The notes under the pieces: model-generated
The model's database searches: none
What the model saw: the letters and a program-made list of their open reading frames with translations, nothing else
What the model was told of the DNA's origin: nothing
Origin: Haliotis rubra
Taxonomy: Eukaryota
DNA: 64,000 bases
NCBI RefSeq assembly: GCF_003918875.1
Contig: NW_025766968.1
Span: forward strand, 7,626,001-7,690,000
Direction: 5' to 3'
Position numbers and translations under genes: made by a program
Shown: piece by piece, positions 9,638 to 59,265 of the stretch
How positions within the stretch are numbered: position 1 is the first letter of the stretch
Layout of the letters: each line of letters opens with the position of its first letter

Positions 9638-9812
9638 TGTGTTAACGACAACGACGTCAGAGAGGTCTGGATGTGTTAACGACAACGACGTCAGAGAGGT
9701 CTGGATGTGTTAACGACAACGACGTCAGAGAGGTCAGGATGTGTTAACGACAACGACGTCAGAAAGGTCAGGATGTGTTAACGACAACGACGTCAGAGAG
9801 GACTGGATGTGT
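9638..9812. repeat. 34-bp tandem repeat, 5 copies
   Basis: TGTGTTAACGACAACGACGTCAGAGAGGTCTGGA head-to-tail, no spacers. Confidence 0.95.
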
Positions 9813-10571: not shown

Positions 10572-13500
10572 ATGGGATGTGGAACGAGTTTTCCTGTGAT
10601 TCCTCCAGATCGCAATTTAGCATCGACAGTCGAAGAACCCCACCTGCCTGAAGAAAACGATAGCGGGATTTTGGATGCGGACTCCGTTGATGGAGCCATC
10701 GAGTCCAACGGTAACACGGAGTTGGTAGAAGGTACATCTGACATTCAACTGATACAGACCCAAGAGGAACCAGGGTTACCTACTCCTAGCAAACCACTTG
10801 ACCAGACTCCAACCCTATTGTCTACAATGAGTACGGATATACCTCCTTTCAATCAAGACTGTCTGAAGTTAGCTCAGCAGTTAGTCACCAAACATCCTCT
10901 GTTAAAATCCGGGTTTGAAGACATCAACTCCTTAGTAAATGCTCTCGAAGACGACCCCGCTTTGGCGTCAAACGGAGAACAGATTAGGGTGCTCGCACAT
11001 AAGGCAATAGGACTTTCATACGTGAACAAGGATGAGTCCCACAGACAGATATTTGCAGAGTACCTGTCTTACACGCGTGCTGCAGATGCTATATACAAGG
11101 CGTATAGTTTGTATCTTAAAGCCAGGAATCTTGAGTTCTTGACGGATAAAGTAGCTCGAGCACAGCTGACGTCAGAGGGAAGCTACCAATTTGTCCGTGA
11201 TATTAGGGGGTTGTTGTGGAACTACACAGACGCCAGTGTCCAGTTCGGCGAGAGGGTCTGCAACAGTGGCCTCCTGCGATATTTTGTGGGGGACCTGGAG
11301 GCTGTTCTGAAAGAAGCTGGTAGCCCTGACAATGTATGTACCAAGCCTTCAACATTGCATCATAAGAGATCGTTCATAATTTATGGCTGTGTGGTGTGTG
11401 TGGTGGTGTGGTGATGATGAATTTAAGGGGGGTCACCCATTTTGTTCTGGGGAGGTGGGGTGGGGACGGTCATCAATTTTGTACACATGTACTAGAGGTG
11501 GGTGGGGTGGGTTGTGTTTGTACATGACATCCAAGGGGGAAGGGGCACATGGTTCTCCATAAAATCATCATTCTCCAAACCATCTTTATCAAGGGTGTAG
11601 AGAAACAACTGTGGATGTAGTCAAACTGTTGTAATACTGTATGCAATCTTTGTATTATTTTTGTGTGACATACATTAACATGATGTTAAATGTTACTTTG
11701 ATTTATAAGATATGAAGCGAGAGTTTAGGCGATACAGTAGCTACAAGACAAGCAAACAACGATAGGACGAAGTGTATAGCGATGGTTGACAGACTGTAAT
11801 TGCGGAGTGTGGATTAACGGACTGTTTTGAATCTGTGCTATCTATCAAGTGTGGATCTTTGTTGACAAATTATGAATCAAAGCGTGTTGACCAGTTGCGA
11901 ATGCGTTTTAATGATTTTTATTTGTACATCTGCATTTACGACCAACTGTAAATCTTTGTTGAAGATCCATCATTAATAGTTTTTGATGGTTTGTTGCTTC
12001 TGTGAAGATCCGGGTTAGAATTGGTCTTGAGCAACCCATGCTTGTCGTAAGAGGCGTCTTAAAGGATTCGGTGGTCAGGCTCGCTGACTTGGTTGATGCA
12101 TGTGATCGTATCAGAGTTGCGTAGATCGATGCTCATGATGTTGATTACTGGATTGTCTGGTCCAGACCCGTATATTTACTGATCGCCGTCATATATAAAT
12201 GTATATGGAATATTGCTGAGTGCGGCATTCAACAAACAAACAACAATTAATGGTTTGCTGAGTATTTCTAATGACGGCCTGTTGTTCATCCTTGATGTGC
12301 AGGTATCCGTACGTGACTCCTTCTTCCGGTCTGCTAGGGGTGTCCTCCACAACTGCACCAACAACCCCATCACCCGCCAACCTATCAGGGAACTGGGAAC
12401 AGTATCTGTTGCCATGGGCTACCTCAAAGGTGAAGCCCCAGGTGAGTGGCGCCGACAGGAATGAAATACTGCAATATATACAATATATTTCTGTATATGC
12501 TATATCTGTCGACCTATAAATATAGTTAGTAGTGCCATATCCCAAACAAATATCTTTAATTACTCTTGACGTGAAGATCCAAAGAATGAATCGGTATGAA
12601 GAAAGCTGTGGTAGTCGAAAGAAGCAACTAACGGGATCGAGTGGTCAGAGTCGTTGACGTGGTTGATGCATGTGATCGTATTCCAATAGGGCTCGTAAGT
12701 AGGTCACGGTACTTCGCGAGACCTCAGTACTTCCGGTGACAAACAGCGTTTCAAACCTTTTCGATAGGCCTCATGGCTGTCAGGAACCGATAATACTTGC
12801 AGGAATAACAAATTTCCGATCAAGCCATCCCCAAATTAGGCAAGTATTACGACTGTCAACATCTGTCCGGTCTAGTAAACTCATATTTGGCCCTATTGCT
12901 TACACGTTAATCGAGGCTCATGATTATGATAATATAATTTGTCCTCAGACCATAGGAAGTTTCTGTATTTACAATTTGTCCCAAATAGCTTGTGACAAGT
13001 CATAAATCACACCTTCTAAGAAACAAAATGGCAGCATTCTGAGAATGATAAGTTCCAGATTTGCTGGATGGGGTAATATTCTACTAGGCATTTTGATGTT
13101 ACTTCCTAAAATCTTGTACCATGGGACCCGCTTCACAAACCAAGCTATGTACATTTACAAAGTCTATCAGGGGACGTTTGGTTAACCTACAGAGGGGTAC
13201 AATGTGTGAAGCCCATAACTGGTATCCTCCATTATGACACTGCAGAAATAACTAGACGTAAAACTAGACTCACTCACTTCAGAGTCTTTGAATTTTCCAC
13301 CTTTCTTGATTCAACAGAAATTAAAATGATGATTCTTCTGCTGCTGGCGAGCATAATCGACGAGGATGACAATAAAGCTCTTCTAGCAGACAGAACCGTC
13401 TTTACCATAATGTTGAACATGATCTTGTACGCCTGGAGAGATCAACGTCATCGCTGCAACGGCTTCTCTGCGTCTGAGCTGATAGCCGGGCTCACGGGAC

Positions 13501-16500
13501 TGGCGAAGAATGACGACAATAAGAAGATCCTCACAGAGAAGGGAGCGATCAATGTACTAATGACTGTGATGCAGGAAGGATCGGATGATGAGCGAGAGAA
13601 GGCAGTTCAGTGTGTTTGGGAGCTTGCATTCGACAAGGATAATCAACGGATATTTTTGGTAGGTCGTTAAAGTGAAGTCTTATGGGTTCATGATCATGTT
13701 ATGTTATATGCATGTACAAAGAGTGAGAGAGTGAGTTGGGTTTTACGCCGTTTTTAGCAATGTTCCAGCAATATCACGGCGGGGGACACCAGAAATGGGC
13801 GTCACACATTGTACCCATGTGGGGAATCGAACCCGAGCCTTCGGCGTGACGAGCAAACGCTTTAACCACTAGCCTACCCCACCGCCCCGCATGTACAAAG
13901 AGCCTAGCATTTATTGAAAAATGGTTTTCAGTTAATGAATCACCACTTCTTATAGATATGGGGGCGGTGGGGTAGCCCAATGGTTAAAGTGTTTGCTCGT
14001 CACGCCGAAGACCCGGGTTCTATTCCCCACATGGGTACAATCTGTGAAGCCCATTTCTGGTGTCCCACGCCTTTCTATTGCTGGAATATTGATAAAAGCG
14101 ACGTAAAACCATACTCACTCATTCATAAGTCTACGTTCGCCTTAGCGTTAAACAAAACTCACTCTTATAGATATGAGTGTGGGTTAATGAATGTGGTGGG
14201 GTAACCTATATAGCTAGGGGTTAACGTACTTGCTTGTCTCGCCGTAGACCCGGGTTTAATTCCTCACATGGCTACAATGCGTGAAGCCAATTCCTGATGT
14301 CCTCCGGGCGCGATATTGCTTTAACACCGCTCATAGCGATGTCCGTACAAATCAATCATTCAGTCAAATAATTATAATCAAATTATTTTACAATGATTAA
14401 CGATTTCATGTTCTCAAATATGACTGAAATTGACATCCAGTACTGGTTTCATCGTTTATCCATCTTTTAAATAGATCACGATCTTTGGAGTGACGGATGT
14501 GCTTTGTTTTTAAAGAACTACAATAATCTTATTTGTCCCTATTTGTTCTGATGTTTAGTTATGTTTTCAGGAAAACGCTCAACTGATGGCAACACTGAGA
14601 AAACTGAACGGGTCACTAAACAAGAAACTGTCCAAAGTTTCCGGGGGCGCTCTGTGGGCTATCACCCAGGAGGAGAAGAGAGAGAACCAGAGTAAGAGAA
14701 CGTCCATTTTTTACTGGACATTTATTTTTGAAAAACCTATTTCATTTTAACCAGTACAATGAGACAAAACATCGCTTGAAGTTGATCCTCCTCTCACAGA
14801 AACATGCCTGTTTGAAGGAGTTCCTCTTCCCAGAATATTTAATGTTGCGTCCCCACCAAGCATTTTAATGTAATAAAAGGCGATTAAATGTTAAATATTG
14901 ACGACACTTTGACGTCTCCTCCCAAATTTAACTGTCACTGAACTGAAAGATTGTTATGACATGGCACTTTGTAAATTGTTTCTAAAGATTGTATCCCACG
15001 TTCATTTCGAGCAGAATTGAAGAAGAAAGATGTGGCGAAGAAGGACGAAAAGGTGCAGGATGCAGGTCATATTATGATCAGTTATCAGTGGGCGGATCAG
15101 AAAATGCTTATCAAGGTATGTTTCTTGTACTCCGACATGAACCTTGTTAGATATATTCTTCTTATGTCTATAGATCTATACGAGGCTTTGTCTATAATTC
15201 GCTGTGTGGACTGTGTCCATTTGACGTGCAGGAAAGCTTGATCATTGGCTCGTATCCTGGCTATATTTCCACAGCATTTTGGGTTTCAACAAAGTGGTAA
15301 AAATGCTACTTGGGGTTTTCCGTTCCGACACTGAAATACTGCTCAAAGCAGCGTTAAAGCAAACAAATCCGATCTTATTCTTCTAAATAATAAACTTGTC
15401 TTTAAGGTGAAGGAGTTTTTGAAAGGCCACAACTTTAAGGTGTGGATGGACATCGACAACATGGAGGGGTCCACGCTGCAGGCGATGGCGGAAGCCGTTC
15501 AGAACGCCTCTGTGGTGTTGGTGTGTATGTCGGAGAGGTACAAGCTGAGTCAGAACTGCAGGTCAGGTGGGTAGGACAACTACAGTAGTTTCAGTTGTAT
15601 TACAGGCCGATATGAATGGCCCATTTAACACAATATTCACACCAGTAGTGGTTAAACAGTTAGAGGTGTGAAGGATCAGTGGCACTGCATTCAGCAGTTC
15701 TTGAATTGTCTCAGGACACTTGCGACTTGGTCGACACATCGTATCCAAAATGCATCTTCTTTCAGGGGCATTTTAGAAGTTTTAAAGATGAAGGAAAACC
15801 AAGTTGTATGGATTGTCAACTTCTTTATTGCAATGAATGCGACGTTTCGGTGTAGGTACTCACACCGTTGTCAAGCAGGTGCTTCAGCAAGTGTTGGACA
15901 ACGGTGTAAGTACCTGCACCGAAATGTCGTATTCATTGCATATGACATAGGTTTCCGTCATCACTGGATTGTCTGTTCCCGACTTGATTATTTGCAGATA
16001 GCTGGAATAACAACAAATAAACAAACAAGCTCTTGCGAAGGTTTCATGCGTCGCACACTGTGCATGTCTTAGCCGTCCCAGTAACCAGTGTTCATGGGTT
16101 CGAATCCCAAATTGTTCCTGATTCAGTATATCGATTTTTTCAGAACTATACCTGGCAAGGTTACCGAGGAGGCAAACAACGTAAACAGGTTTTGTCACAA
16201 TCAAGCTGACATACTGTAAAACTTAAATACTTACACAAACTTTAAATCCAGCTCACTCGTACCCAGTTTCGTACATACAGACCGGTTTGTGACAAATAAC
16301 AATCTGGATGATAAGACGTCCATATTACAGTTGTAGACGACATGTCTGCCCAATATCTGACAGCTTTAGCAAGCACGTGATCATGGAACAAGTCACTTCC
16401 GGTTCAACCCACAAAGGAGAGTTAATTCTAAACTTATCCTCGAATGGACATTATTTTTCTAATCCTAAAGGGACCATATCTTTCGATCATATCTTTAAAG

Positions 16501-18620
16501 GGACAGTTACCTCCAATCTAATCCTTGAAGGGATAGTTACTTCCGGTGTAATTCTTCAAGAGACTGTTATTTTCCGATATAACCTGACTGGGTGATTAGG
16601 GACATTTTCAACTTATATTTCAATTTTTGAGCCCTGTTCCATGTCACCCTTAGTCTCAGATTAGCAGGAGACCCTGAAAGTAAAGTAAATCCTCCATCCT
16701 CACTCAGTCAGTTTTGAAAAACAAAACAAATATGGGCTCACAAAAACAACAGTTCTTTGACCTCCTAGCTTACTTTGCCTCCATGTACGGTGATACAGAA
16801 CTATACCTAAGAGGATTTGCTGGAAACATTTTATCACATAGAACCTGACTCAAGCGATTTTACATTACAGAAGCTGAGTATGCCTTTGACCTCAGGAAGC
16901 CCATAATACCCCTTCTTCTACAGAGAGACTACAAGCCCGATGGCTTTCTGGGATTGATCAAAGGGGCAAAACTCTTCTTCGACTTCAGCGGAAAATACCC
17001 TTTCGAAAAGAAAGCTTCGGAGTTGGTGAAGGAACTTGGTGCTCGAGGCAAGGCAGGGTCGTCAGCCGATAGTATTGACGTGAGTGACAACATTTCTGTC
17101 CAGTCAGATTCGTACGTGAAACACCTATGTCCTTAAACGAGCTTTACTGGTGTGTTTTTCATCTGACAATAGCTTTTCAGCGGATTTATATCTCAAATGA
17201 TACATAGCAACGGTAATGCCATCGTTTTCTCGAACATAAACAATATCTCGTGGGTATAAAGGCGAAGTGTGAAAAAGCAGCGATTTTGACGTACTGGGAA
17301 AACTGTAGTCATACCAACCTCGATTTAAGAATCCCTGGGACAAAGAATTAATCTTTGTTTAGGTAGAACCTTCGAACTGCACTCTGAAGGAGAAAAAGAA
17401 ACGTCATCTTTGTTATTTACGAATGATATAATACCACATTTAAAAATATATTCAGTAACAACGGATACACCGTTTTCAGTATCTTTCAAGTTTTTTTAAA
17501 GAATATCACTCTAAAACAATGATTCTGTTACTACAGATATTGGTTAATCAGGGCGAATTCCCTTGATTGGTACCGTCAGGATTAACGAGATTTCCCTTTA
17601 CTCAGCGTCTTTATGAATATCTCATTGTTACAGGTTTCTTCCAAATTGTTTCAGGGGGAGACAACTGCAGTTGTGAAGTCCCAACCGTCTGATGCTGGTC
17701 GGGGCGCGAGTGGTACAGCCAACTGGTCACAAAAAGATGTCCAAAACTGGCTTTGTAAACTGAACTTGGAAAAGTAAGTATCTGATAAACATTTGACAAT
17801 GGGAACAAGTTTCATCGTAGTCGTCTTATCAATTGACGGAGCTCTATGCTTCAGATTAGTGAGATATTTGAATGTTAATTTTGATTCAAGAGTTGCGGCC
17901 CTTACCTGTGTGAGGACTTGCTGTTGTTGAATCACCTTATAGTGTTTTCAGTGGTCATATCAAACATTTGTCTCACACAGTGCTGTCCAAGACTGTTACA
18001 CTTAGTGTTTTTTCAGTTTTACAACCACCATGAACGAGTTGAGGGACTTTGTCGCTGTTGGAGTGGAACAAAGTCACTGAGATGAAAGCATGATGTATGT
18101 TGAATTTGTCCAGGTTCAGAATATTTCTGCTCCCTTATTCAGTGATCGTTTTTCAGACATTCTTCGCTGAAAGGTCTCACCGGAAAGCAGTTGATGTTTC
18201 TTCATAAGATATCGTACAAGGTAAACAAGTGGATACTTCAAAGTGGCTGTATATATTCATAATATCACATCACGATTCTTCACGAATCAAATTCGGGATA
18301 ATTAAATTTAGTATAAAGTTTTCCAATCCTCTCTTTATGTGTCTTGACTTTGTTAATCCAAACGAAAAAAGAATTGTTTAAGGGTTCATTTTTAGCGTTC
18401 TGGTTGATAATGGTTAAAAGGATATGGTCACTTACTTTTGAATATGAGCACTGACTAAAGCAGATATTCAGAATTTCACAGGGTTCAATTACTGCTCAGC
18501 GATAAAATTCTCTTTTGTTTACAGGCACCAGAATTCTTCTACAATTACATCAAAAATGACCTGAAGTTGAGCAGTCTGGAAGATCTGATGATCTTCAGTG
18601 AGGCTGTGGAGAATTTGTAA
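10572..18620 (+). CDS. Paralog A: myristoylation-motif ARM-repeat / TIR / SAM-like protein, 703 aa, 10 coding exons
   Basis: Exons 10572-11333, 12303-12441, 13318-13658, 14571-14691, 15015-15115, 15407-15566, 16871-17079, 17655-17773, 18157-18220, 18525-18620 (TAA). All introns GT-AG, phases 0,1,0,1,0,1,0,2,0; 2112 nt open. Starts MGCGTS. ARM-like motifs LLWNYTD, GVLHNCT, GLTGLAKNDDNKK, AVQCVWELAF, GALW. TIR GHIMISYQW..VWMDID..VVLVCMSERYKLSQNCRSEAEYA..IIPLLLQ. SAM-like WSQKDVQNWL..LTGKQLMFL..APEFF. Confidence 0.93.
11362..11580. mobile_element. MITE-like element in intron 1 of gene A
   Basis: TIR-like TAAGAGATCGTTCATAATTTATGGC; body GGGGGGTCACCCATTTTGTTCTGGGGAG shared with 26944-27072. Confidence 0.6.
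12001..12245 (+). mobile_element. Family-2 short retroposon, near full length
   Basis: GTGAAGATCCGGGTTAGAATTGGTCTT..CCCATGCTTGTCGTAAGAGGCG..GGAATATTGCTGAGTGCGGC and (AAAC)n tail. Confidence 0.85.
13724..13888 (-). mobile_element. Family-1 tRNA-SINE
   Basis: Full length; 14-bp TSD GCATGTACAAAGAG at 13710-13723 and 13889-13902. Confidence 0.92.
13961..14163 (+). mobile_element. Family-1 tRNA-SINE (a degenerate copy follows at ~14195-14360)
   Basis: GGGGCGGTGGGGTAGCC..GGTTCTATTCCCC; TSD CTTATAGATATG at 13949-13960 and 14164-14175. Confidence 0.9.
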
Positions 18621-25957: not shown

Positions 25958-28900
25958 ATGGGCAGTTCAAGTAGCGCGTCAAGGCCACCACGCAGTGTTT
26001 CCCACAAAGACCCCAGAAGTCCCATCCGACATTCAAGACATGACGCGGGAACCATGGAAACAGCCGCTAGCGACGACAAGACACAGACGATGGATCTTCT
26101 ACTTCCAGCATATAACGAAGATGACGTCAAAACGGCCCAGAACCTGCAGAAAGACCACCCAGAGTTGTTCTATGTGTTTGAAAAAATGCACGCACTTGTA
26201 GAGAAGCTAGAAGAGAATCAAAAGTCCCAATGGCAGTGGATTGAACTCGAGGAAAGTATTGAATCCAGCATGGAAAGTTCATATTTTGATCATTATGAAA
26301 AGAAGCGGATTTTGGGGAGGTACATGGCCTTGCTTCGAGCTGCAAATCCCTTTACCGAGGCATATGGTGATGCACTTGGTGAAGCCGGTCTCACAGCATT
26401 CACTGCCAGAACTGTTAAATCCCACGCAGCAGATGCGCCTCTTGGGTTCCTCGTCACGCTGAGATCAGTGTTGCTGAACTATACTGATTCCAGTTTATAC
26501 TTCTGTGAAAAACTTGCTGATAGTGGTATCTTCAAATATTTTGTTGACGATCTAAAGCAATCCCGTGAACATGTGGCGGACTTCGATGATGTGAGTATAT
26601 ATTCTCTGTTGTATGTTCTCAGCTTTCAATATTCTAAAACATCTAGTATATTTCACCTTGATCACATGAACTTTACAGATTTACGTTTAACATATTGTTG
26701 TAGTGAAGTAACATTGAGATCCTATCCAGCAAGACACCAGCAAAACCACATGATAAACACCAGTTTAAATACTATCAACTAAAACCGGACTGAACTTGTG
26801 TTTTTGTGGACTAAGGNNNNNNNNNNNNNNNNNNNNNNNNNNNNNNNNNNNNNNNNNNNNNNNNNNNNNNNNNNNNNNNNNNNNNNNNNNNNNNNNNNNN
26901 NNNNNNNNNNNNNNNNNNNNNNNNNNNNNNNNNNNNNNNNNNNNGGGGGGTCACCCATTTTGTTCTGGGGAGCTGGGGGGTCATCAATTTTGTACACACG
27001 TACTGGGTGTGTGTGTGTCTCCATAAAAATCATCATCACCCCCCCTAGCCATAAACCATGAACGGTCCCTAATTCAAACGTCAATTATTCAAGAGGCAAT
27101 GAGATTTCCGGTCTTTACATCTCTTGAAATGGGGTTGAGTATTACCGTAACACTTCTCACACTGGTAAAGCTGATTCAGCCGTTGTCTAACAACTTTCAC
27201 ATCTCTCTGTAAGGGGGCCGACGATTGTTTTGTCGCTTCCATTGGGGTGCTGTACAACTCTGCCCGAAATCCTGCCATCAGACAGACTTTAAGGAACCTG
27301 GACACCGTGTCTGTTCTCTTGCCATTCCTTAAATCCAAATCCGAAAGTAGGTATTGGTGCTTTTTGTTTCTCAGTTATCCTCCTGTAAATATGAACTCAT
27401 TATCACACATTTTTAAAGATGATGTCATCCGTTGGTTATGACTTCACTAAGATTTAATTAACGTCTTCCTAACAATTTCTCCAGTGAAAGCAGAAAATAA
27501 ATACTTCGGATAATATAAAGAATAACAATAACATACGACCTATGCAGAATCACAGTTACTTTAATGAACATTATGAATTTTCGTTGACATCTCTCTCCAA
27601 GGATCGTTGTTTACAACATCATTTCACTCGGGAGAGATAATCCGTACCTGTCATTCTCTGGGTATATTGTATGGCAATTACGTCCATGTTTACAACGTCT
27701 CACTTCTTGTGTTGCAGAGGTGCGGATGTTGGTTCTTCTCAGTCTCGCTAATATGTTGGATGAAGACCAAAACGACCTTCTTTTGGCTGATGATTCTGTG
27801 TTTGACTTCATTCTGTTTGTATTGGATCGAGCCTGGAAATATTCAAATCATCGATTCGATGGCTTCAGTGTTGAAGAATTGATAGATGGAATGACAGGGT
27901 TGGCCAAGAATGACTCCAACAAGACTCTGCTGGTGAAGAAGGGGGTGTTGCCAAAGATGATGCTTGTGATAAAGAACAGCAGCAGTGGTGAGGAGATCGA
28001 GAAGGCTGTCAAGTGTGTTTGGGAACTGTCTTTTAACGAAGAGAACAGGAAAGATTTCAATGTATGTACCATTCGGGTGTTGGGTGTTGAACGGGAAACT
28101 TGATTCATAAACAATTTTTTGAGGTCGTCAGAACCTTTGGATTGGAGAGTAAGGGTTTTGCAAACGTACCTCTATTTTCAGAACAGTTCAGCCTTTATTA
28201 AATTTATCCTTTGTTTAGATATATAATTGTTTTAAGAACTAACATATGCCTACGTTGTGTTGACTGCCAAGACACAGGAGTCAGTACATGAATCGCCAGG
28301 CAGTAGGAGAGTAGGAGCAGGAGATGGGGCCCGGGTTCCCCGCCAATGTATTCCTTGAAGATACAAACGAAGTCATGTCATACTCAGGCATGCCCTGTTA
28401 CTAGGATTATTGGGAATCCAAATCCAATTGTGTCCTCTGCATTTAAAGGTTACGAATGCATTTGTACGATGTGATCATTGACTAAAGTCTAGAACTCGTT
28501 GTTCTTACTCGTATATGATTTACAAACGAGCATGAAAAGTCATGAGATAGCCATTGAATATAAATTAATCAAAAGATTGTTTGAACTTCATGATCCTTTT
28601 ACAGGAAAACAAGGAGCTAATGGATTTACTAAGGAAGTGTAAGAATTCCTCGGATAAGGCCGTCGCCAAAGCAGCAGAAGGAGCTCTTTGGGTTCTGCAG
28701 ATGAAGACAAAAGACGGTATGATGCACTATAATAGTACCCCCTTCCCCTTTAGTGTGGTAAATGTACCGCGCACCTACCGCTGTGGTAAACCGAAGCTTC
28801 CGTATGAAATGTATGGGGCAAACAGTGCCCACCCGTCGATAAAATTACAAATCACTCACAGTCACGGTTTATATCTATCGTTATCTATGTCACCATATCG

Positions 28901-31900
28901 CAGTATCAGTTTGTGGATAGTCTTGTTTGCTCTGTGAAGAATTTACTATGCATCACTGCCATTTGCATATCACGTGATCGGGCTTTTCTCCTCGTGGGGA
29001 TCCTCCCATTACGCAGACAGGCAGTTCGCAGACACCTTAAAACAACAACATTTACAGATAAGTTGCTACCTGTTACCTACACATTATAATGGGATAGTCC
29101 AAATAAAAACAGAAAAAAACTGGAGCTATATTATTTACTTTGAAAGATGACGGAAAATACATGTCATTAATTTGAATTCTGATTGCTGCAACATAAAAAC
29201 TGTTGATTTTCGTAAACATTTGGGTTTAACGTTCTCATCATTATTATATTGAAAACATTGTCAAAAACCCATCTAAAATGATTGGAGCATTTCAGAAATT
29301 AAAGTTCTTACTAAATAGAACAACACCAGGTTTTCTTCAGGATTTACTGCCACCTGTAGTAGGCAACCGGACAAGCTATGAGTTAAGAAGTTCCAATAAT
29401 TTCTAGCTAACCATGTACAAGACTGAGGCACTCAACATCATCTTTTTTTCCACCAGCAGTTAAAATGTGGAATAATATTCCCTTAGCTATCAGAAATTGC
29501 GACTCTGATGCATCACTTAAATCTTGTGTCCACATGAAAGAAAAATGTACACCTAAATATTATTCATATGGAATAAGAAGGTTAAATGTTTTGCACACAA
29601 GATTAAGATATAAGATATATGCACTTAATTATGATTTATTTAGAATAAATATAACAATATGACGCATCATGTCAACGTGGCCATGGATGTGAGAATGTTT
29701 AACATTACTTCCTTGAATGTCCATTGTATACTATTCAAAGACATAAACTGTTACAATCTTTAGAAAGTGTTGTTAAAATTAGAACACTGATTGGTATTAA
29801 TCTTATCTTTCATGGCAATGCAGGTCTCTCAGTTACTGACAATCAGAATGTTTTCAAATATGTACATATCTATATCTCTCAAACAAATCGTTTTCTCGGT
29901 TAACTTTTGTTGTACATATTCTGTTATTGGGAGAGGGCTTTTCTAAGTAGGAAAACTTGTGCCCAATCCTTTTCTCGAATGAATAACATATGTTTCAATC
30001 AATAAACACAATCAAACCTCTCAGTGACAAACCTGTTTTTATATTCGATAATAATTGATAGTAAAAACAATTTGGAGAAGAGAAGACAGATTATCATTTG
30101 ATCACAACAAAAGTCTATTTACACACAATCAAACTTCTCAGTAACGAACCTGTATGGGCTCACCCTACTCTACTCACCATGGGAGGACTGTTCCATTATA
30201 CCCGTAGGTGTTACCCTAATTAACCTACTAGTTCAGTGTCTTTCAATCGACTGTCTGTCAAATGGGTGTATGTCAATTGGGAGATAACCTCCTCGTGCAA
30301 ACAAGCCACCATTACGGAAATTTGAGCAGGTCTTGCTAATGGCCAAGCGTGGTTTACTGATTACAGATATTTCGCGACACTCGCATGCCAATGACCGTAT
30401 TGTTTGCTTTCGAAAGAGTACGATATGGAAGCACACAGCCTGTGTAAACAAAGAACACATCTAACATTTGAAACAATATGTTCACGTTTCATATGCCGTC
30501 AATGAAATTAACCTATTCATGATAAATGTTAGTCTAAATGTGGCGACCTTTCAGAAACACGATTGATGACAATCATAGTTTATTGAATGGATTGAGAAGA
30601 CCTGACGAATCGTCACATTTCCTTGACTGGTCCCAGTGGCACTAGCTTGACTGCCAGGATCTCTGGGTGGAAGAGCGGAACATTATTGTGAACAGTACTG
30701 TAATTCAGTCGATCAGATATGTGGATTGTAAGGATTAGTAGATTCTTCAAACAATGTAATATTTCTTAGATCGTGGTTGTTTTATTTACCCCAGAAAACA
30801 AGAAAAATCTCAAAGAAGACAAGAAAGACATATCCGGTCACGTGATGATTAGTTACAACTGGGGCGACCAGAAGACGCTTCTCCAGGCAAGTAGGGGTAA
30901 TTCTTGCGGATCGTCATGTTCATGACGTAGAACCGTCTTAACATACATAGGCGGATCCATAGGGAGGGTGCAGGGGTGCGCAACCCCACCCCACCTTTTG
31001 TACAGAAAGTTTATTAAAAGACCATTGAAACTCGAGAGAAAATGGGTAAAAATGAACTGTGCACCCCCCATCCCCTTTCTGAACTGCCCTATCCCCCTTT
31101 TTTCCAAAAACTGTATCCGCCCCTGACATGGTAAACTACCGTATTTCTCCATTTATTTTATCAACGGACTTTCAGACCCGGCGCTTATTGCGCTTACTGG
31201 GTGTAATTAATATGACTAAAGGGACCATTCCATAATAAATCTACTTCTTTATCAAGGGAGAATACATTTATGAAAAAACCGTACCCGCCGCTTATTAGAG
31301 TCTCGGCGCTTTTTAGAGGAAATAGGGTACATATAACATCAACAGGTGCCCAATATACAATGTACAGCTCATCTAACGGATAGGATTCGATTGGGTGTAA
31401 AACGCAAATTAGGTGAAAATGTGCACTTGTGAATGGATCACTGAACCTTAACGAGGACATCATGTATTACCGACAACAGTAACCAACTAACTGGTCAAGT
31501 TCATTTTAGCAGGGGGTAGAACAGGTCAGATCAGTGTATTACCATTAACTTCACTTTCTTATCACTGGACCGTATCATGTTGTTTTAACCTGTAGGCAGT
31601 TTGGAACTGTAGGCAGTATGGGAATACACCGGCGTCTTGTCCTATCTGTAGCACCCGTCTCGGTTAGGGATACAACAGCGCTTGGAATACACGCTTGATG
31701 GTCACAATTGCCATTTATGGTTCGTGTGTGTGTGTGTGTGTGTGCGTGCGTGCCGAACTTTGATGTGTGTGTGTGTAGTGCTATTTCAAATGAAGAATTC
31801 TAAAAGTTAAGCGTTCATCTTATCATATGTCGAAATGACATTGTTTTCAGCGAATATATTGATAGTTCTAATACGAAAAAATATCGTTGTCAACTTGTAC

Positions 31901-34900
31901 ATGCTTTCTACCAGGTGAAGGAACTACTGAAGGCTGACGGTTATAATATTTGGATGGACGTCGACAACATGGGAGGGTCCACACTGCAGGCGATGGCGGA
32001 GGCCGTTCAGAACGCTTCTGTGGTGTTGGTGTGTATGTCGGAGAGATACAAAGAGAGCCAAAACTGTAGATCAGGTAAACTGTCACAGAACGGATGTATA
32101 AATTTGTTTGTTTGTTGTCGCTAAGCAATATCCCAGCTATATGGCGGCGGTCTGTAATTAACCGAGACTGGACCAGACAATCCAGTGATCAGCATCATGA
32201 GCATCAATCCACGCAAATGGGACATGTCAGCGAGCCTGACCACCCGATCTCATTAGTTGCCTCTTACGACAAGCATGGATTGCTGGGGTGAGGTGAGGTG
32301 AAATTGGGGTTAACGTCGTGCTTGAGAATATTTCGCTCATATGACGACTTGCATGCGTGTGTATGTGTATGTGTGTGCGGCTGCTTGTACTAGCCCAGAC
32401 TTAAGCTGGTTTTATAGTGCTAGCCCACTGAGATACCATGCCGCAGTGAAGCATGAATACCCCACTCAGACACATTATACTGACTCCGAGCCGACCAGTC
32501 CTTGTTGTACCCATTAATGCCGATCGCCAGGCAGGGACCAACAAGTACCATATTTTAACGTCTTTTGGTATGACGCGGCCGGGGATCGAACCCGCGACCT
32601 TCCGCTCTCCGGGCGGACGCTCTAACCACTACACCACAGAGGCGGTCGGTGTGGATTGCTGAAGACCAATAGTAACTCGGATCTTCTCTACAGTGTGCGA
32701 AATAGTTTTCGAAGTTTGCTAGTCAGTCGGGCTAGCGATGCCTGAAAGTTACTAGCAGACAAGTGGACACGGGTTTCATAATTTAGCTGCTAATATGATG
32801 AACATTTTTATCAGGCCATAATCTTGTATGTTTTTTAAAGTGTATTATATCTTAAAAAGTCGGAGAGAGTGATATATTTACAAAATGACCCTAATGAAAA
32901 TTCACTAGCCAGTCGGACTAGTGACTGTGGAGATTTACAGGCCCGACTGGATTTTTACTAGCCACGAGCTAGCGGGTCAGTGGCTATTTCGCACACTGCT
33001 TCACGGGTTTATAACTTTGTACTCGTTGATATATCGACAACTGTATAGTATGGGAAAATATACATAGGAGCAAATCAACCCTTCGAAGAGTTGTTATAGA
33101 GGTATAGAATGATTGAGTGGTTAAGTTTTCATTGTTCTTACGTTATTGCCTAAATAAACAAGTTTAATCATAAATAAAATGAAAGTGGATGCTTGATTTA
33201 AGGTACAGAAGGATGCTTTCTACATGTAGGTTGCATTCAGATGTCCCTTGACAATTCTAACATTATTACCTTCAGACGTTGTAATCGACATTTGCCCATG
33301 TAATTTACTCTGGCATATACCTACACAATAACCGTTAATCGCGTTAATCCCTGTAGCCAGGCACACATTGACAGCGATCAGATAATCTGTTATTCCGAGG
33401 TTATTCTTCATATGACTCATAATATTATATATTTTTGAGAACTAAATGCAGAACCAATGTGTGAAAGGTCAGCCGTACAGAGATCCATCACTGACGTTAG
33501 CCTATTTGTCCTATGTTAGCGGTGCTTGATATATACTGAGAGAGAAAAATAAAGGATGACAGGGAAATTTACGCGTTCTTTAATATTTTTCCAGTTTTCA
33601 TCACCAGCTTTGAATAGCGCTGTGGTGATGAAAACTGGAAAATAATAAAAGGAACGCTTGAATTTTCCTGTGATCCTTTATTTGTTTCTCTGGTGTCCTC
33701 CAATTACGCAGACAGCCAGTTCGCAGACACCTTAAAACAACAACATTTATGGTTCAGTGAACAGATTATCTCCTACCTGTTACCTACATATTATAATGGA
33801 ATAGTCTGCAAATCAGAATGTTTTCAAATATGTACCTATCTATATCTCTCCAACAAAACGTTTTCTCAGTTAACTTCAGTTGTACATATGCTATTATTGG
33901 GAGGGGTCTTATCTATCAATAAACACAATCAAACCTCTCAGTGACAAACCTGTCTTTATATTCGATAGTAATTGATAGTAAAATCAATTTTCAGAAGAGA
34001 AATCATTTATCATTTAATCACACCAAAGTTCTATTTACCCACAATCAAACTTCTCAGCAACGAACCTGTTTCAGGCTGACCCTGCTCTACTCACTAGACA
34101 GTGGACTGTTCCATTATACCCGTAGGTGTTACCCTAATTAACCTTCTAGTTCAGTGTCTGTCAATTGGGTGTCTGTCAATTGGCAGATAACCGTTTCTCT
34201 CAGTATATTTCCACCTGTATATGTAACTACATGCTCTTGTAACCAGGCTTGGTGGAGTAACCTCGTGGTTAAAGCGTTGGCTCGTCACGCCGAGGGCCCG
34301 GGTTCGATTCCCCACATGGGTGCAGTATGTGAAGCTCATTTCTGGTGTCCCCCGCCGTGATATTTCTGGAATATTGCTAAAAGCGGCGTAAAACCCAACT
34401 CACTCACACAGTAACACCAAAAATGGGTACAGGGTGTGAAGCCAATTTCTGGTGTCCCCCGCCGGGATCTTGCTGTTATATTGCGGCGTAAAACTAAACT
34501 CACTCATTCTGACATTATCAGAAATATTTCCCTTTCTTCTCCAGAGGCAGAGTACGCATTCTCGCTACAGAAGACCATCATCCCCTTATTGATGCAGAGG
34601 GAGTATAAGCCAGATGGTTGGTTAGGGATGATAAAAGGAACCAAGCTTTTCTTCGACTTCAGCGGAAAATACGACTTTAATAAGAAGTTGATAGAACTCA
34701 GCAGAGAGTTAGGAGAGAGAGGCAAGGGTCTTGAAGCTGATGCTGTTGATGTAAGTTTCTTGGTTGTTTATGAGAACATAGCTTATTTTGTTTCTGTTAA
34801 ACAGTGAATCAGTTGTCTAATGAGTAACTGTCGGAGTAACAGGAAGACTACGCTGTATATTCTCATTCGATATACATGTGCATGATACAAAGTTCCTGTA

Positions 34901-37900
34901 TAGAATAGAATTAATATTATTGGTCATAACGGTAGTTATTTAAATAGCAAACAACGCTTTGCATGATCCCAGCTAGTGATTATTATGTTTTCGTTCCCCT
35001 AAAGTTGTTCTTTAGATCGTTTAGTACGCAAATGTACTCAACAAAAAGTTAGGAATCATGAATATTTTTATGAAAACGTATGTTCAGTTTTAACAAAACA
35101 TACTAAAAAAATTATGTACTATGCTTTCTGTTTTCTGTATTACATATACAGTTAATTTGATCCCGTTCGTTAGAAATCTCTTTATTAGGACGATATAGTT
35201 TTTATGAACATAATTTCATTATTACAAACACGATTACAAGAAAATATCATATCACGTAATTTAGCCTGTTTTGATTACATTCAGCTAAAGTATAGCGTTA
35301 TTAGAATTGACAACACTGTCTGCCACTGAATTTTTATGGTGCATATCTGTTTCAGTAAACCGTCCGTATTAGGACTGAAGGTTTTGTTGTACTTGTTCAG
35401 GAGGGGCGGTGGGGTAGCCTAGTGGTTAAAGCGTTGGGTCGTCACGCCATAGACCCGGGTTCGAATCCCTTCATGGGTACAATGTGTGAAGCCCATTTCT
35501 GGTGTCCCCCGCCGTGATGTTGCTGGAATATTGCTAAAAGCGGCGTAAAACCAAACTCAGTCAGTCAGTCTTGTTCAGGACCAGGTATTATTTCATAGAG
35601 ATGTGACGACAGGCAGGAATCCATGAAACAAATAAACGATATTTCTTAATAACGGTAACCATTGTACGTTGTTCCGTCAGGGTGAGGTGAGGACGACCGC
35701 TCCCGTCCTGAAAGCCGCAGCTGTGGACGCAGCAAGAGGCCCAACAACTGCCGCTTGGTCCAACAAAGACGTGCACAACTGGCTAGTGAAGTCCGGCCTC
35801 AACAGGTACATCGACTGTCATGTCTACATTAGGGCTTAATGCGATTGGTTACACAAACCTATGCTTGTGTTTTCGAATTTAGCTTTACTCTTATTATATT
35901 TCTATGTTTGCCAACATCATTCCGTTTGCTCGTTGGTTCACTAAACTGGTAAACTTCTAAGGCCCTTTCCACTTCCTCATTGAGCTAATAGGGTTGGTGG
36001 GGTAAATTAGTGGTGAAAGTGTATGCTCGTCACGCTGAAGACCCGGGTTCGATTCCCCAGATAGGTACAATGAGTGAAGCCCGTGATATTGCTGGAATAT
36101 TGATAAAAGCGGCGTAAAACCATAATCTCTCATTGAACTGGCATGCTGTGACCTGACTGAAATACTCTCCTAAGTGTATGTCCAAATATATTCAAATGGC
36201 ATTAAAATATCTCCGTTAGTTTTGTTGTTTGTATTCATAAACGGTTCAATAACGCGGGGAACTGTCTCACATGGCAAACATTATTCCACTCCCTATTCTG
36301 GAGTTGTCGACCAGAGTAGACAATTGACGAGTCACCCGTCTCTGCGTTCTACTGGGTCAACAGGTTTATATATGTATACAGTTTGTACCGAGTAATGGTT
36401 CTGGAGTAGTTTGCCCGAAGTGTTGTGTTGTGTTGTGTTGTGTTGTGTTGTGAATAGACTTTGTTGGGCGGATTCTTGTTGGCGTATGGTTTCATCTGTG
36501 GACCTTAACTCATTAAGCCCGAGAGACGCTTCACTACTCAACACCTGGAACCCTTCGCTAATTGCCCTGCTCGCTGTTGCGAGGCTAATTAGTGCTATTC
36601 ACACCTGATTTCCCTGGTAGGTTTCGGGGATGACAGGAAACTGTCTAGTCGTACAATCAAGCTCTGATTGTTTAATTGTGTCGTAAACATGTAAGTTAAA
36701 AGAAAGCATGGAAAGAAAGCTTGGATAGAGATTGATTATTGGCTATATCGTTGACCAGTCGATATGCTGGGTTTCGGCGTTATCAACTCAAGCTATTATG
36801 TAACAGTTTGTGTATTATAAACATACATACTCGTAACGATCCATGAAATATACACATAAGACAAATAGGAGTAGATAGATCTCAGAGATCGAAAACACAT
36901 TTGAGTGTTTTTCGATAAGTAAAACAAAGAGATTGAAATCCAACCATTGAGTAGAGATAGTATTTATTTTCATATACATTTTACGCACACAACTAGTACA
37001 TAAACATAATGGTTTGCTGTACATGTAAACATAATCTTCACCATGAAACGAATGAATATCCAAATTAAAGTACACGTATTATAGAATTCAAAAAGTGACA
37101 CGATACTGAATAATTATAATGCATAAACTTGCAGTTTAATCCCCCAAATATTTATGAAGATGGGCGTGCCTATATTCATACTGAATGTAAACGAGGTTCA
37201 TAAGAATACAGATGTGCATTTATGCATAAACATTACAAAGAGGGGCGTAAAGCAGGTTGTCCAATGACATAACATCGCATCTGTTTATTTTACACTTATC
37301 ACGGGACAAACCTTTCAACAAGGGCGTAACTACATATGCATTCTACCGGAGGCTGTTATTTCAAGGTCGAAAGAGATGTTCAGTTATCTCATTACTGTAA
37401 TCTGATTGAATGATTATACGCATGTGTATCGATACTGTAACTGATATACTATCCTGCTTTTACTGACGATGGATCAATAGAGACTGAGTTCATTGATACA
37501 CGTGATAATTACACCGGATCAGATAATTACAGAGATCAAATACAAAAGTTTTTACACAATGCTCATGTAAATTGCATAGAAAACTGACAATTCAAATCAA
37601 CATGAAATTTTCAACAGCTTGAACAAAAATGCTTGAAATACCTTTGTACGGTTTACATGTCATAACTTATGATATTATTTCTGTCTATGAGTAAGAATCT
37701 TTTGAATTACCAACTTACTGTTTTTTGTTGTATTTGTTTCATTGTTGTATTAACACTGACATGTATATATATTCGATGCGAGTTATCACTTTATATTCGA
37801 TTAGGTAACATTATCAACTTTAGATTATGAAAAATAAATAGTTACAATTCAGTAAGCTTTAAATTAGTAACTTATGTCTAATCTATTCGAGCTTGGATAT

Positions 37901-40348
37901 ATAATTATTTGTGTATACGATTCATTATATGAAACATGACAACGTAAAAATACCTAGAAAGTAAATTCAAACTATTCTATTGTGTTTGAATTCTTTGTAT
38001 GTCCTTGAAATTTCGTATATTGTTTCCTATTTATTAGGTAGTTGAAGAAAATATAATCTTCAGTAACCTCTAAACCATTACATCAAATTCAATCAATGTG
38101 CATAAGAAGCATTTTAGTATCCACTCCCAATGAAGAGTACCAGACACTTTCCTCTGTAAAAACATCATAATCCCCTTTCTCGCCGACATGTGTGTATTTG
38201 CCAAACGCTGTATAAGCCTATGATAATGAATAGCGGTCTACTCCCATTTGTGAGAACTCCCAGTTGTGAGACTCCAAGTTGTGAGACAGTGGAGTAGGTA
38301 CTTAGCAAAGAAAACACACCTTACTCCCCTATCTGATAGAATGGATTAACCCCAGCTAATTATGGATTAGCTATTTAAATGAATCTTGTGGAGGTAACTT
38401 AATGAAACTCTAAAAGATAAAGTAATTAACCTACTCAGATAAATGGCTTTAAAAAATAAACACTTTGTGTAGGTAACTTCGTGATCATTTGAAAGAGAAA
38501 TAGCAATTGCTATCAAAACACTTTAAATACTTCTTCTGATTAACACTAAAGGTAGCAACTCTCGTACGAAAAGCTAATCTTTGCTCAGTACAACTATATT
38601 GGTTGAAATAATAGGTACAGTGCAATTTTTAAAAGTACGACACACATGTGCGTCTCTCGCTGAATAAGAAGTGCTTTTCTGATGTCGCCCATGTGCGGCT
38701 CTCGCTGAATAAAAGGTGTTTTCTGTTGTTGCACATGTGCGGCTCTCTCTGTGAGAAGCTAATTAATTTGTCGCACATATGCGTCTCTCGGCCTTAAATG
38801 TAAACACACTTGACTCGTCAACAATGGATATAGTGGTTGATCAGTTGATCGAATACTATCAGGGTTGATGGGACCCAGAAACATGAATTCAACCACTATA
38901 AATATATTTACTGATGATCAACTACCAATATTATTGCCGATCGCTAACAATCATTATCATTAAATAAAATCAATAGAACGTGTGATCGGCAACAATAAAT
39001 GTTATTTATGGTCGCCAACAATCAGTAGTTAGTGTCCGTCTAACAACAGAACATTATCATGTCTAATCACACACAATAAATATTTCAGACCTGATCGGCA
39101 GAGAACAGTATCGTGTCTGATAATCAGCCATTACTATTTCATATCCGTCCATCAGCAACCAACATCACGCCAACAGGAGGGCATCAAAACTAAATTGCAC
39201 AAACAAAAATCGTTCAGTGATTATCTGCTTTCTCTATTAAAGGCACTCCTCGCTGAAAGGTCTCTGCGGTGAAGATTTGGTATTCCTTAAGAAGCTTTCC
39301 TACAAGGTATAACTCACAATTCGTATACATATCCCTTTGTGAAATGTCTATTACGATATAGTAGTAAATCCACACTAGAGTCCATTTGTCTACAAATGAA
39401 AACAATGAAATATCTTAAATAACTCCTACCGTTGTGCCCTCTCCGTTGAAGATGTCAACTTGTACAAATAACGACATAGTAGTTTCTTTACAACTTTGTC
39501 CAGTGATGGGTATAACAATAACTAACATCCATGTTATTGGGCACAGGATATTCTTTGCTTAGTACCGATTTGACAATTAATAACATATTCCCGATTTTAT
39601 ATTTTGCTATTCATCATGGTTCCAATTTGGAACGGACTACAAAACGATTCATTCCCAACTGGTCAAAGGGACAAACATTATCAATATTTTGATTGATGTT
39701 CCTGGTTGAATATATGGTTTACTATGCAGCTAAGTGACATGAAACTGAAGATGCCATGTGCCAGAATAAATTAAAGCGAAAGTTTGAACACATAATACGC
39801 TTATTTATTCAATGTACCTGAACGCTTGATATGGATATCAGAACTAGTTGTGTAGAGTAACTTAACTAACATGATCCAGGAGTCGTGATTATGTGAAACA
39901 TTTAGTGATTTCCAAAAACTTAAAAAATGTTGCTTGACAGTCTATACGTTTTCGCAATGAAACAGTAGCGTCAGGTTTACTCGCCAGTGCTCGCCATTAA
40001 TTTGCTGCCCCAGATAATAACAATAGCGTGATGTCATGATAATGGTTTGAGATTCATTGTTATTCCCTTGTACCCAAGGTGGTTGGTGTCACCCTTTGTC
40101 CACATTCTGGGCTTGTTTATGCTTCGCGAGCAGACATAGTTGTCAACCTGAGTATGTACAGTTATCTGATAGCATACCGTCACCCATGCAGAATGGAACT
40201 CATTATATGATGTATAAATGTTAAATAATGTATTCATTATTGTCTTCAGGCGCCGGAGTTCTTCTACACGTATGTCAAGGACGATCTCCAGCTGAACGAC
40301 CTGAGAGACATAAGGAGGTTCAGCGAAGCAGTGGAACGTCTTAACTGA
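25958..40348 (+). CDS. Paralog B: ARM-repeat / TIR / SAM-like protein, 655 aa, 10 coding exons
   Basis: Exons 25958-26590, 27214-27346, 27718-28061, 28605-28716, 30795-30886 (GC donor), 31915-32074, 34545-34750, 35681-35805, 39243-39306, 40250-40348 (TGA); 1968 nt open, same intron phases as A. Starts MGSSSS. TIR GHVMISYNW..IWMDVD..SQNCRSEAEYA. SAM-like WSNKDVHNWL. Confidence 0.92.
26817..26943. other. Assembly gap (127 N) in intron 1 of gene B
   Basis: Run of N. Confidence 1.
26944..27072. mobile_element. MITE-like element, same family as 11362-11580
   Basis: Shared body; terminal GCCATAAACCATGAACGGTCCCTAA is the reverse complement of the TIR-like end seen in gene A. Confidence 0.6.
29180..29905 (+). 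mobile_element. Decayed 3' fragment of a CR1/L2-type LINE ORF2
   Basis: Frameshifted peptides KHLGLTFS, GAFQKLKFLLNR, MWNNIPLAIRN, YYSYGIRRLNVLHTRLRY..LNYDLF, HYFLECPLY (C-terminal Cys/His motif). Confidence 0.75.
30949..31125. mobile_element. MITE with (CAGG)GGCGGATCCA-type TIRs
   Basis: AGGCGGATCCA ... TGTATCCGCCCCTG with G- and C-rich subterminal tracts. Confidence 0.65.
31137..31330. mobile_element. Tc1/pogo-type MITE
   Basis: TA-CCGTATTTC ... GAAATAGGG-TA ends; internal repeated GCGCTTATT. Confidence 0.55.
32286..32651 (-). mobile_element. tRNA-derived SINE with V-domain-like core (family 3)
   Basis: Minus strand TGGTGTAGTGG (A box), GGTTCGATCCC (B box), GTCATACCAAAAGACGTTAAAATATGGTAC core, (TCACC)n tail; 10-bp TSD TGGATTGCTG at 32276 and 32652. 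Confidence 0.85.
32691..32998. mobile_element. hAT-like MITE
   Basis: Perfect 15-bp TIR CAGTGTGCGAAATAG / CTATTTCGCACACTG; repeated subterminal (G/A)CTAG motifs. Confidence 0.85.
33541..33691. repeat. ~150-bp imperfect palindrome (foldback MITE)
   Basis: AATAAAGGAT.ACAGG.AAATT..TTTTCCAGTTTTCATCACCA / TGGTGATGAAAACTGGAAAA..AATTTTCCTGT.ATCCTTTATT. Confidence 0.85.
34246..34407 (+). mobile_element. Family-1 tRNA-SINE (a 3' fragment follows at ~34424-34507)
   Basis: B box GGTTCGATTCC; (ACTC)n tail. Confidence 0.88.
35403..35569 (+). mobile_element. Family-1 tRNA-SINE
   Basis: Perfect A and B boxes; TSD CTTGTTCAGGA at 35392-35402 and 35570-35580. Confidence 0.92.
35990..36128 (+). mobile_element. 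Family-1 SINE, internally deleted
   Basis: B box and tail present. Confidence 0.8.
38642..38790. repeat. ~45-bp degenerate tandem repeat, 4 copies
   Basis: CACATGTGCG(T/G)CTCTC recurs. Confidence 0.7.

Positions 40349-59221: not shown

Positions 59222-59265
<44 letters not shown>

What the first reader, a model, noticed from the sequence alone, without database searches (positions are those of the whole stretch)
15459..15569. TIR catalytic core homogenised between distant paralogs (gene-conversion tract)
Seen: A 15459-15569 and C 49510-49620 match at 108 of 111 nt; the three mismatches are synonymous and the match runs into the donor GTG. The 5' third of the same exon and the other exons are strongly diverged, and exon 1 barely aligns. 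B shares a ~60-nt near-identical sub-tract (~31984-32045). A second tract, CAAAACTCTTCTTCGACTTCAGCGGAAAATACCC, is identical in exon 7 of A and C. Inference: protein-level selection does not preserve synonymous sites, so ectopic conversion probably keeps the catalytic and assembly surface common while sensors diverge. That would let paralogs co-assemble.
Basis: partly seen in the sequence, partly recalled or inferred. Interest (0 to 1): 0.72.

Follow-up and report, generated by a model that had tools for sequence, protein, structure and literature searches.

The report
Gene-conversion patch in clustered TIR genes
Three anciently diverged neighbouring immune-type genes (ARM-TIR-SAM) share a short, almost letter-identical stretch inside their TIR domain because DNA was copied between them; this is real, but the process is well known and was already described for vertebrate TLR1/TLR6.

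Summary
A 15459-15569 and C 49510-49620 match at 108 of 111 nt. All three mismatches are synonymous, and the match ends 3 nt into the intron.

Everywhere else genes A, B and C are 29-65% identical in protein. Their synonymous sites are saturated: 140 of 240 amino-acid-identical codons differ between A and C. In the tract only 3 of 32 differ (Fisher p 7e-8, permutation p 5e-5). NG86 dS is 0.09-0.14 in the tract and cannot be computed elsewhere.

Three controls argue against nucleotide-level constraint:
- Recent duplicates (A/A2, C/C2) diverge in the tract as fast as in the rest of the gene.
- An unlinked member of the same subfamily, G on contig C2345, has 31 of 35 identical residues but only 76% nt identity, with 16 of 28 codons changed.
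- Homologues from other species keep the motif but not the codons.

B carries a separate 62-nt identical sub-tract. A 34-nt identical tract lies in exon 7. GC3 is raised in the tract (0.8 against about 0.5).

My reading is short-patch interlocus gene conversion among clustered paralogs. The idea that selection maintains it so the paralogs can co-assemble is untested. The close precedent is TLR1/TLR6 (PMC2077338). Interest is modest.

The parts
10572..18617 (+). Gene A. It has an N-terminal MGxxxS start, an ARM-like region (exons 1-4), a TIR domain (exons 5-7) and a SAM-like tail (exons 8-10).
   Evidence: ORFs and paralog-conserved exon cores. Pfam gives TIR_2 at 34.5 bits for exon 6, with weak ARM and SAM hits. 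A spliced contig in run X6 lies on exon 3 and exon 6 with no other letters, with depth also over exons 4 and 7.
25958..40342 (+). Gene B, a paralog of the same architecture. The masked N run 26817-26944 lies in its first intron and was left untouched.
45411..51381 (+). Gene C, a C-type paralog.
54119..60100 (-). Gene D, an inverted near-copy of C (coding dS 0.039). It is the other arm of the palindrome. The outer boundary is approximate.
15407..15566 (+). Exon 6 of A. It starts in phase 0 and ends 1 nt into the presumed catalytic Glu codon.
   Evidence: Splice-site context. Spliced contigs X5 (record 23) and X6 (record 24).
15460..15566 (+). Homogenised tract in A. The coding part is 35 full codons, 15461-15565.
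49511..49617 (+). The same tract in C.
55876..55986 (-). The same tract in D. It has one extra non-synonymous change, ACG to ATG.
31984..32045 (+). Sub-tract in B. Its 62 nt are identical to C-type copy C2. It differs from C at one position and from A at two.
16967..17000 (+). Second short identical tract (34 nt) in exon 7 of A.
49825..49858 (+). Partner of the exon 7 tract in C.

Best explanation
The stretch is a short interlocus (ectopic) gene-conversion patch. The window holds a cluster of ARM-TIR-SAM genes. Their three lineages (A-type, B, C-type) split so long ago that synonymous sites are saturated. Within the most conserved part of the TIR-coding exon 6, about 107 nt were copied between the A-type and C-type lineages. 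This happened roughly when A and A2 duplicated, since tract dS of about 0.1 matches the A/A2 dS. A separate patch of 62 nt links B and the C-type. A third patch of 34 nt in exon 7 probably links A and C.

Shown here: the anomaly at synonymous sites, the mosaic breakpoints, the ordinary substitution rate of the tract among recent duplicates, and the lack of homogenisation in an unlinked family member.

Inferred: the mechanism, namely heteroduplex repair from a nearby paralog, with patches confined to the stretch that protein-level selection keeps similar enough to pair and ending where the intron removes homology. Also inferred: because paralogs about 76% identical rarely start conversion, the patch has probably been homogenised repeatedly since the duplications.

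Selective benefit is not required by the data.
For: - Tract against rest. A-C shows 3 of 32 amino-acid-identical codons changed in the tract and 140 of 240 outside (p = 7e-8). A-C2 shows 2 of 32 against 138 of 238. Permutation gives p = 5e-5 or less. dS is 0.09-0.14 in the tract and saturated outside.
- Rate control. A-A2 dS is 0.144 in the tract and 0.106 in the rest. C-C2 is 0.045 in both. The tract is therefore not intrinsically slow.
- Unlinked control. G on contig C2345 has the same exon structure and the derived AVQNA motif, with 31 of 35 identical residues. Yet it is 80/105 nt identical, with 16 of 28 codons changed. Against A-C2, p = 1.8e-5.
- More distant relatives. Far paralogs F2 and F3 show 9-12 of 24-25 codons changed. 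Other-species homologues show 7-16 of 21-24.
- Mosaic structure. B is identical to C2 for 62 nt, then has 8 differences in the next 25 nt.
- Uniqueness. Genomic self-BLAST finds no other A-C similarity apart from exons 6 and 7.
- GC3 is 0.78-0.83 in the converted copies against 0.49-0.56 in the rest of the genes (p = 0.001), as GC-biased conversion predicts.
- A's own version of the tract is seen in contigs of two further studies with no other letters, so it is not an assembly or polishing slip.
- Precedent: TLR1/TLR6.
Against: - The classic test was not possible: paralogs within a species being closer than orthologs between species. In organism C the contigs break inside the tract.
- The 3' end of the tract coincides exactly with the exon end. 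A splicing-related constraint would also give that.
- The donor and the number of events cannot be determined.
- The 34-nt exon 7 tract is only borderline on its own. By my own rough estimate, not a tool result, its chance probability is about 0.04. Some of its two-fold codons are also kept in the far paralogs.
- The raised GC3 is also seen in the unconverted 5' part of A's exon 6 (15 of 18).
Confidence: 0.8

Rival explanations
1. Purifying selection acts on the nucleotides themselves (an exonic splicing signal next to the donor, an RNA structure, a small-RNA target or an antisense element) and keeps the tract alike in A, B and C-type genes without any copying.
For: The tract ends exactly at the exon/intron boundary. 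The intron position after 'NCRxG' is conserved in the ten fragments from other species.
Against: - Recent duplicates change in the tract at the normal rate or faster.
- The unlinked subfamily member G, the far paralogs and other-species homologues keep the peptide and the intron position but not the codons.
- B has diverged in the 3' part, next to the donor, where a splicing signal would lie.
- There is no excess RNA structure (z = 0.17) and no Rfam match in the tract.
Confidence: 0.07
2. Chance, combined with strong amino-acid conservation and codon preference.
For: The peptide GSTLQAMAEAV is nearly invariant across species. The region is rich in GC-ending codons. One other-species homologue shows only 7 of 21 codons changed.
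Against: With the same peptide, genome and codon usage, copy G reaches only 76% nt identity. Permutation and Fisher tests give p from 5e-5 down to 1e-8.
Confidence: 0.03
3. A single structural event rather than homologous conversion, for example replication template switching or a chimeric partial duplication that pasted an exon fragment. Alternatively, an assembly or polishing artefact that blended paralogs.
For: - Paralogs about 76% identical are poor substrates for classical conversion (general knowledge).
- The window contains a spacer-less palindrome (C/D) that might itself be an assembly or fold-back product.
Against: - There are at least two tracts with different end points (A/C 107 nt, B/C 62 nt) and a third in exon 7.
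- There are no junction scars or indels.
- The same tract is present in eight copies on two contigs, each with private changes.
- A's version is confirmed in contigs of two other studies.
Confidence: 0.08

Closest known systems
Gene conversion between mammalian TLR1 and TLR6 (Kruithof et al. 2007, PMC2077338)
   Same: Tandem paralogs of an innate-immunity family. A TIR-containing segment is kept alike at the DNA level while the sensing parts diverge. The authors attribute this to conversion that limits divergence of interaction surfaces.
   Different: - There the tract covers about 300 residues and was shown to be independently homogenised in nine species.
- Here the patches are 34-107 nt within single exons, between genes with saturated dS.
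- Here the proteins are cytosolic ARM-TIR-SAM proteins, not TLRs.
- Here there is no between-species evidence.
SARM1 / TIR-1 (ARM-SAM-SAM-TIR NADase)
   Same: The same three domain types (ARM-like, SAM, TIR). A Glu sits at the position of the catalytic Glu, after a C-x-x motif.
   Different: - The domain order is ARM-TIR-SAM.
- There is an N-terminal MGxxxS motif, a candidate myristoylation site.
- The family is multicopy.
- No sequence-level orthology was shown.
- The SAM and ARM hits are below Pfam thresholds exon by exon.
[quoted passage not shown]
   Same: Cytosolic TIR proteins that are expanded in invertebrates and absent from vertebrates.
   Different: I could not read the defining paper, so I could not assign these genes to a numbered ecTIR-DC family.
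Converted TLR TIR segment elsewhere in this genome (earlier scan note s1-325340)
   Same: The same genome and the same kind of event: a TIR segment homogenised between paralogs with diverged sensor halves.
   Different: It concerns a different gene family (TLRs) and a longer tract (377 nt). I did not check it.

Membership tests
Interlocus gene conversion / concerted evolution | A bounded tract whose divergence between paralogs is significantly lower than in the flanks, including at synonymous sites | tested here: met
   3 of 32 codons changed in the tract against 140 of 240 outside, p = 7e-8. dS is 0.09-0.14 against saturated. Permutation p = 5e-5.
Interlocus gene conversion / concerted evolution | The low divergence is not explained by a locally low substitution rate or by constraint | tested here: met
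   A/A2 and C/C2 diverge in the tract as fast as elsewhere. Unlinked copy G has the same peptide but is 76% nt identical.
Interlocus gene conversion / concerted evolution | Paralogs within a species are closer than orthologs between species in the tract only | not testable with these tools
Interlocus gene conversion / concerted evolution | Mosaic breakpoints or several tracts with different ends | tested here: met
   The A/C tract is 107 nt, the B/C2 tract is 62 nt with a diverged 3' part, and exon 7 has a 34-nt tract.
Interlocus gene conversion / concerted evolution | GC-biased composition of converted sequence | tested here: inconclusive
   GC3 is 0.78-0.83 in the tract and 0.49-0.56 in the rest (p = 0.001). 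But the unconverted 5' part of A's exon 6 is also 0.83 (n = 18).
TIR domain (Pfam TIR_2, PF13676) | Score above the curated cut-off | tested here: met
   Exon 6 alone scores 34.5 bits (A) and 39.2 bits (C) against a cut-off of 28. Exon 7 continues the profile from position 71 to 121, below the cut-off on its own.
Enzymatic (NADase-type) TIR | Catalytic Glu in the helix C motif | tested here: inconclusive
   A Glu codon is split by intron 6 and falls between the Pfam matches of exon 6 (to profile position 69) and exon 7 (from 71). A weak alignment (E = 0.5) of far copy F2 to the RPP1 TIR places ...SPNC on ...SSWC. That this is the catalytic position rests on general knowledge. No structure or assay was done.
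SARM1 orthologs | ARM-SAM-SAM-TIR domain order | tested here: not met
   The SAM-like exons 8-10 lie after the TIR exons 5-7.

The most novel reading that the evidence does not exclude
The segment coding the BB-loop, helix B and strand C is a concerted-evolution island that selection maintains. Repeated conversion would be retained because paralogs with very different ARM 'sensor' halves must still form mixed TIR assemblies, or share one partner. The cluster would then work as a combinatorial sensor array with a common output module.
Probability: 0.12. Interest if true: 0.6.

Novelty: new member of a known kind. Interest (0 to 1): 0.3.

Why it matters
This is a clean, well-controlled example of conversion homogenising a very short stretch between paralogs that are otherwise saturated. 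It occurs in an invertebrate TIR family whose function is unknown.

On the practical side, trees or dating built from the TIR domain of these genes will be misleading.

On the biological side, it marks the stretch (by inference the BB-loop to helix C) as the part of the protein that does not diverge among cluster members. That makes it a reasonable place to look for a shared interaction or catalytic surface.

It does not open a new question. The same logic was described for TLR1/TLR6.

Tried and rejected
- cDNA-templated conversion is rejected. The first 33 codons of exon 7, which follow the tract in the mRNA, are as diverged as the rest of the gene.
- RNA structure or a known RNA family in the tract: z = 0.17 and no Rfam match.
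- PDB sequence searches with single exons gave nothing significant, the best being E = 0.2-0.5. The mapping onto TIR secondary structure is therefore by inference only.
- The word-based protein search with exon 6 found only fragments 63-73% identical, from other organisms. No near relative was available for an ortholog-versus-paralog test.
- Read laying at 80% likeness was dominated by interspersed repeats. It confirmed splicing and A's tract but gave no usable tract sequence for organism C.
G is known only for exon 5, exon 6 and the first 28 codons of exon 7.
- Incongruent sharing: two sites in the tract are shared between A2 and some C-type copies (codon 26 position 1 with C4; codon 36 position 3 with C and D). 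This could mean later exchanges, but two sites are too few to claim it.
- A paper search for the suspected species and its assembly size found nothing.
Exons were searched one by one by reference. Joined codon statistics were computed only inside scripts from the stored files.
- The big representative-protein search was not used, because the claim did not depend on it.

Full report
**What is in the window**

The sequence is eukaryotic, about 39% G+C, with spliced genes. An earlier scan note calls the genome abalone, which I did not verify.

Four paralogous genes lie in the window:
- A, 10572-18617, + strand.
- B, 25958-40342, + strand.
- C, 45411-51381, + strand.
- D, about 54119-60100, - strand.

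Each begins MG(C/S)xxS, a candidate N-myristoylation motif. Each has four exons with weak ARM-repeat similarity and three exons (5-7) that form a TIR domain. Exon 6 alone scores 34.5-39.2 bits against Pfam TIR_2 (cut-off 28). Exon 7 continues the profile from position 71. The C-terminal exons have weak SAM similarity. The order is ARM-TIR-SAM, which is not the SARM1 order.

C and D are the two arms of a 14.8-kb palindrome with virtually no spacer. Its centre is at 52754/52755 and the arms are 96.5% identical.

Gene A is transcribed and spliced as modelled. A 1956-nt contig of run X6 lies on exon 3 and exon 6 with no differences, with depth also over exons 4 and 7. A 182-nt contig of run X5 covers exon 6 (15404-15566).

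**The observation**

A 15459-15569 and C 49510-49620 agree at 108 of 111 positions. The three mismatches (15493, 15508, 15514) are third-position synonymous changes.

Exon 6 is 15407-15566, so the last three matching letters are the donor GTG. Identity collapses immediately after that and also 5' of 15460.

The rest of the genes is very different. Exon 1 is about 30% identical in protein and the ARM exons are 37-51%. The 5' third of exon 6 is 52% identical in nucleotides, and exons 7-10 are 57-65%.

A genomic self-comparison finds no other A-C similarity, except a 52-nt hit in exon 7. That hit contains the exact 34-nt match at 16967-17000 / 49825-49858.

B carries a 62-nt stretch, 31984-32045, identical to the C-type consensus. 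It is followed by 8 differences in 25 nt.

**Is it more than chance or protein constraint?**

I scored only codons that encode the same residue in both genes, leaving out Met and Trp.
- For A-C, 140 of 240 such codons outside the tract differ. Inside the tract, 3 of 32 differ (Fisher p = 7e-8).
- For A-C2, the counts are 138 of 238 outside and 2 of 32 inside.
- Shuffling these flags 20,000 times gave a 33-codon window this clean once.
- NG86 dS is 0.09-0.14 in the tract and cannot be computed (saturated) for the rest.

**Controls against nucleotide-level constraint**

1. The genome (G000) holds further copies. A2 lies on contig C720; it is a relative of A with 80-98% identity across the gene region. 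C-type copies C2, C3 and C4 lie on the same contig.
   - Among these recent duplicates the tract changes at the ordinary rate. A-A2 dS is 0.144 in the tract and 0.106 elsewhere. C-C2 is 0.045 in both.
2. A protein search of the genome found another member, G, on contig C2345.
   - G has the same intron between exons 5 and 6, the same derived 'AVQNA' motif, and 31 of 35 identical residues in the tract.
   - Its nucleotide identity to A and to C is only 80/105, with 16 of 28 identical-residue codons changed. Against A-C2 this gives p = 1.8e-5.
   - The same peptide, genome and codon usage therefore give about 76% identity, not 97%, when the copy is unlinked.
3. More distant copies and species do not keep the codons.
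   - Three far paralogs align at 76-78% in the DNA search.
   - F2 and F3 have 9-12 of 24-25 identical-residue codons changed; the F1 exon is broken.
   - Exon fragments from other organisms keep GSTLQAMAEAV, with 7-16 of 21-24 codons changed.
4. The tract has no unusual RNA folding (z = 0.17) and no Rfam match.

**Mechanism**

The pattern is a sharply bounded patch with recent common ancestry inside anciently diverged genes. Different patches link different gene pairs, and only the copies on contigs C2078 and C720 share it, not those on C2345, C746 or C2506. This is the signature of short-patch interlocus gene conversion.

The A/C patch is about as old as the A/A2 duplication, since their dS values are similar. 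Both A and A2 carry it.

The patch does not continue into the start of exon 7, so a cDNA template is unlikely.

Its 3' end at the intron, and its location in the most conserved peptide of the protein, fit conversion being limited to the only stretch with enough similarity to pair. This is an inference.

GC3 is 0.78-0.83 in the converted copies. It is 0.49-0.56 in the rest of those genes, 0.58-0.67 in the same stretch of F2, F3 and G, and 0.29-0.40 in two of three other-species homologues. This agrees with GC-biased conversion but is not conclusive.

Because sequences about 76% identical rarely start conversion, repeated homogenisation since the duplications is more likely than one late event. 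This is also an inference.

**What the tract encodes**

Exon 6 matches the TIR_2 profile up to position 69. A weak alignment of far copy F2 to the RPP1 TIR places ...S-x-N-C on the plant ...S-S-W-C.

By general knowledge of TIR domains, the tract would then span the BB-loop, helix B, strand C and the start of helix C. It ends one nucleotide into the Glu codon that would be the catalytic Glu. The rest of that codon and helix C lie in exon 7, which is not homogenised at its start.

'Catalytic and assembly surface' is thus a fair but unproven label. No evidence bears on co-assembly.

**Comparison with what is known**

Kruithof et al. 2007 (PMC2077338) showed that gene conversion keeps most of the TIR domain and adjacent parts of tandem TLR1 and TLR6 alike in nine mammals while the N-terminal parts diverge. 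They proposed the same rationale.

The present case is a new member of a known kind. It is shorter, lies between more diverged genes, and belongs to a different, uncharacterised TIR family.

**Limits**

- The between-species test could not be run.
- The full G gene could not be fetched.
- The donor cannot be named.
- The exon 7 tract is only borderline by itself.
Exons were searched singly by reference.

Noticed in passing
window 45342-60174 (centre 52754/52755): Genes C and D are the arms of a 14.8-kb inverted repeat with virtually no spacer. The arms are 96.5% identical with many indels. Contig C720 matches both arms only up to the centre point. This is either a real fold-back duplication or two haplotypes joined head-to-head by the assembler.
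   Followed up: partly
G000 contig C720 (135 kb; loci L018-L030, L037): A second cluster holds one A-type copy (A2) and three C-type copies (C2, C3, C4), but no B-type copy. C3 has a frameshift in exon 7, and C4 is badly degraded in exons 1-4. Whether C720 is a neighbouring segment or a divergent haplotype is open.
   Followed up: partly
G000:C2345:907693-907851 (L046): A further member of the same subfamily (G) lies on another contig. It has the same peptide but unconverted codons, and I used it as the control. The rest of that gene was not seen.
   Followed up: partly
G000:C746:652278 and 672720 (L009, L010, L031-L034): The far paralogs F1 and F2 lack the intron between exons 5 and 6 that A, B, C and G have. 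F1 has in-frame stops in exon 6 and is probably a pseudogene.
   Followed up: no
window 13721-13888 and 13961-14125, plus more than 15 other places (e.g. 232-391, 4495-4642, 21672-22017, 35403-35566, 40550-40712, 44139-44298): An interspersed repeat of about 165 bp, SINE-like, 85-93% identical between copies. It often occurs in inverted pairs inside introns, and contig depth over it is enormous in all four runs laid. ARAGORN finds no tRNA-like part in it.
   Followed up: partly
window 15830-15940: A 110-nt self-complementary element in intron 6 of A. It gives sub-threshold matches to miRNA-precursor models on both strands (41.6 and 27.9 bits against a cut-off of 90). It is very deep in the laid runs, so it is probably a hairpin-forming repeat (MITE-like) and not a gene.
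   Followed up: no
window 7777-8196 and 9638-9813: Two minisatellites lie upstream of gene A. One has a 37-nt unit with a 150-nt higher-order period. The other has a 34-nt unit in 5.2 copies at 96% identity. The first is greatly expanded on contig C720 (about 32.5-36.7 kb).
   Followed up: no
window 12889-13673 against C720 47023-47806: The exon 3 region of A and A2 is 97.6% identical, while the flanking introns are about 87%. This may be plain coding constraint or another exchange.
   Followed up: no
window 10572, 25958, 45411: A, B and C all start with M-G-(C/S)-x-x-S, a candidate N-myristoylation signal. This suggests membrane anchoring of these ARM-TIR-SAM proteins.
   Followed up: no
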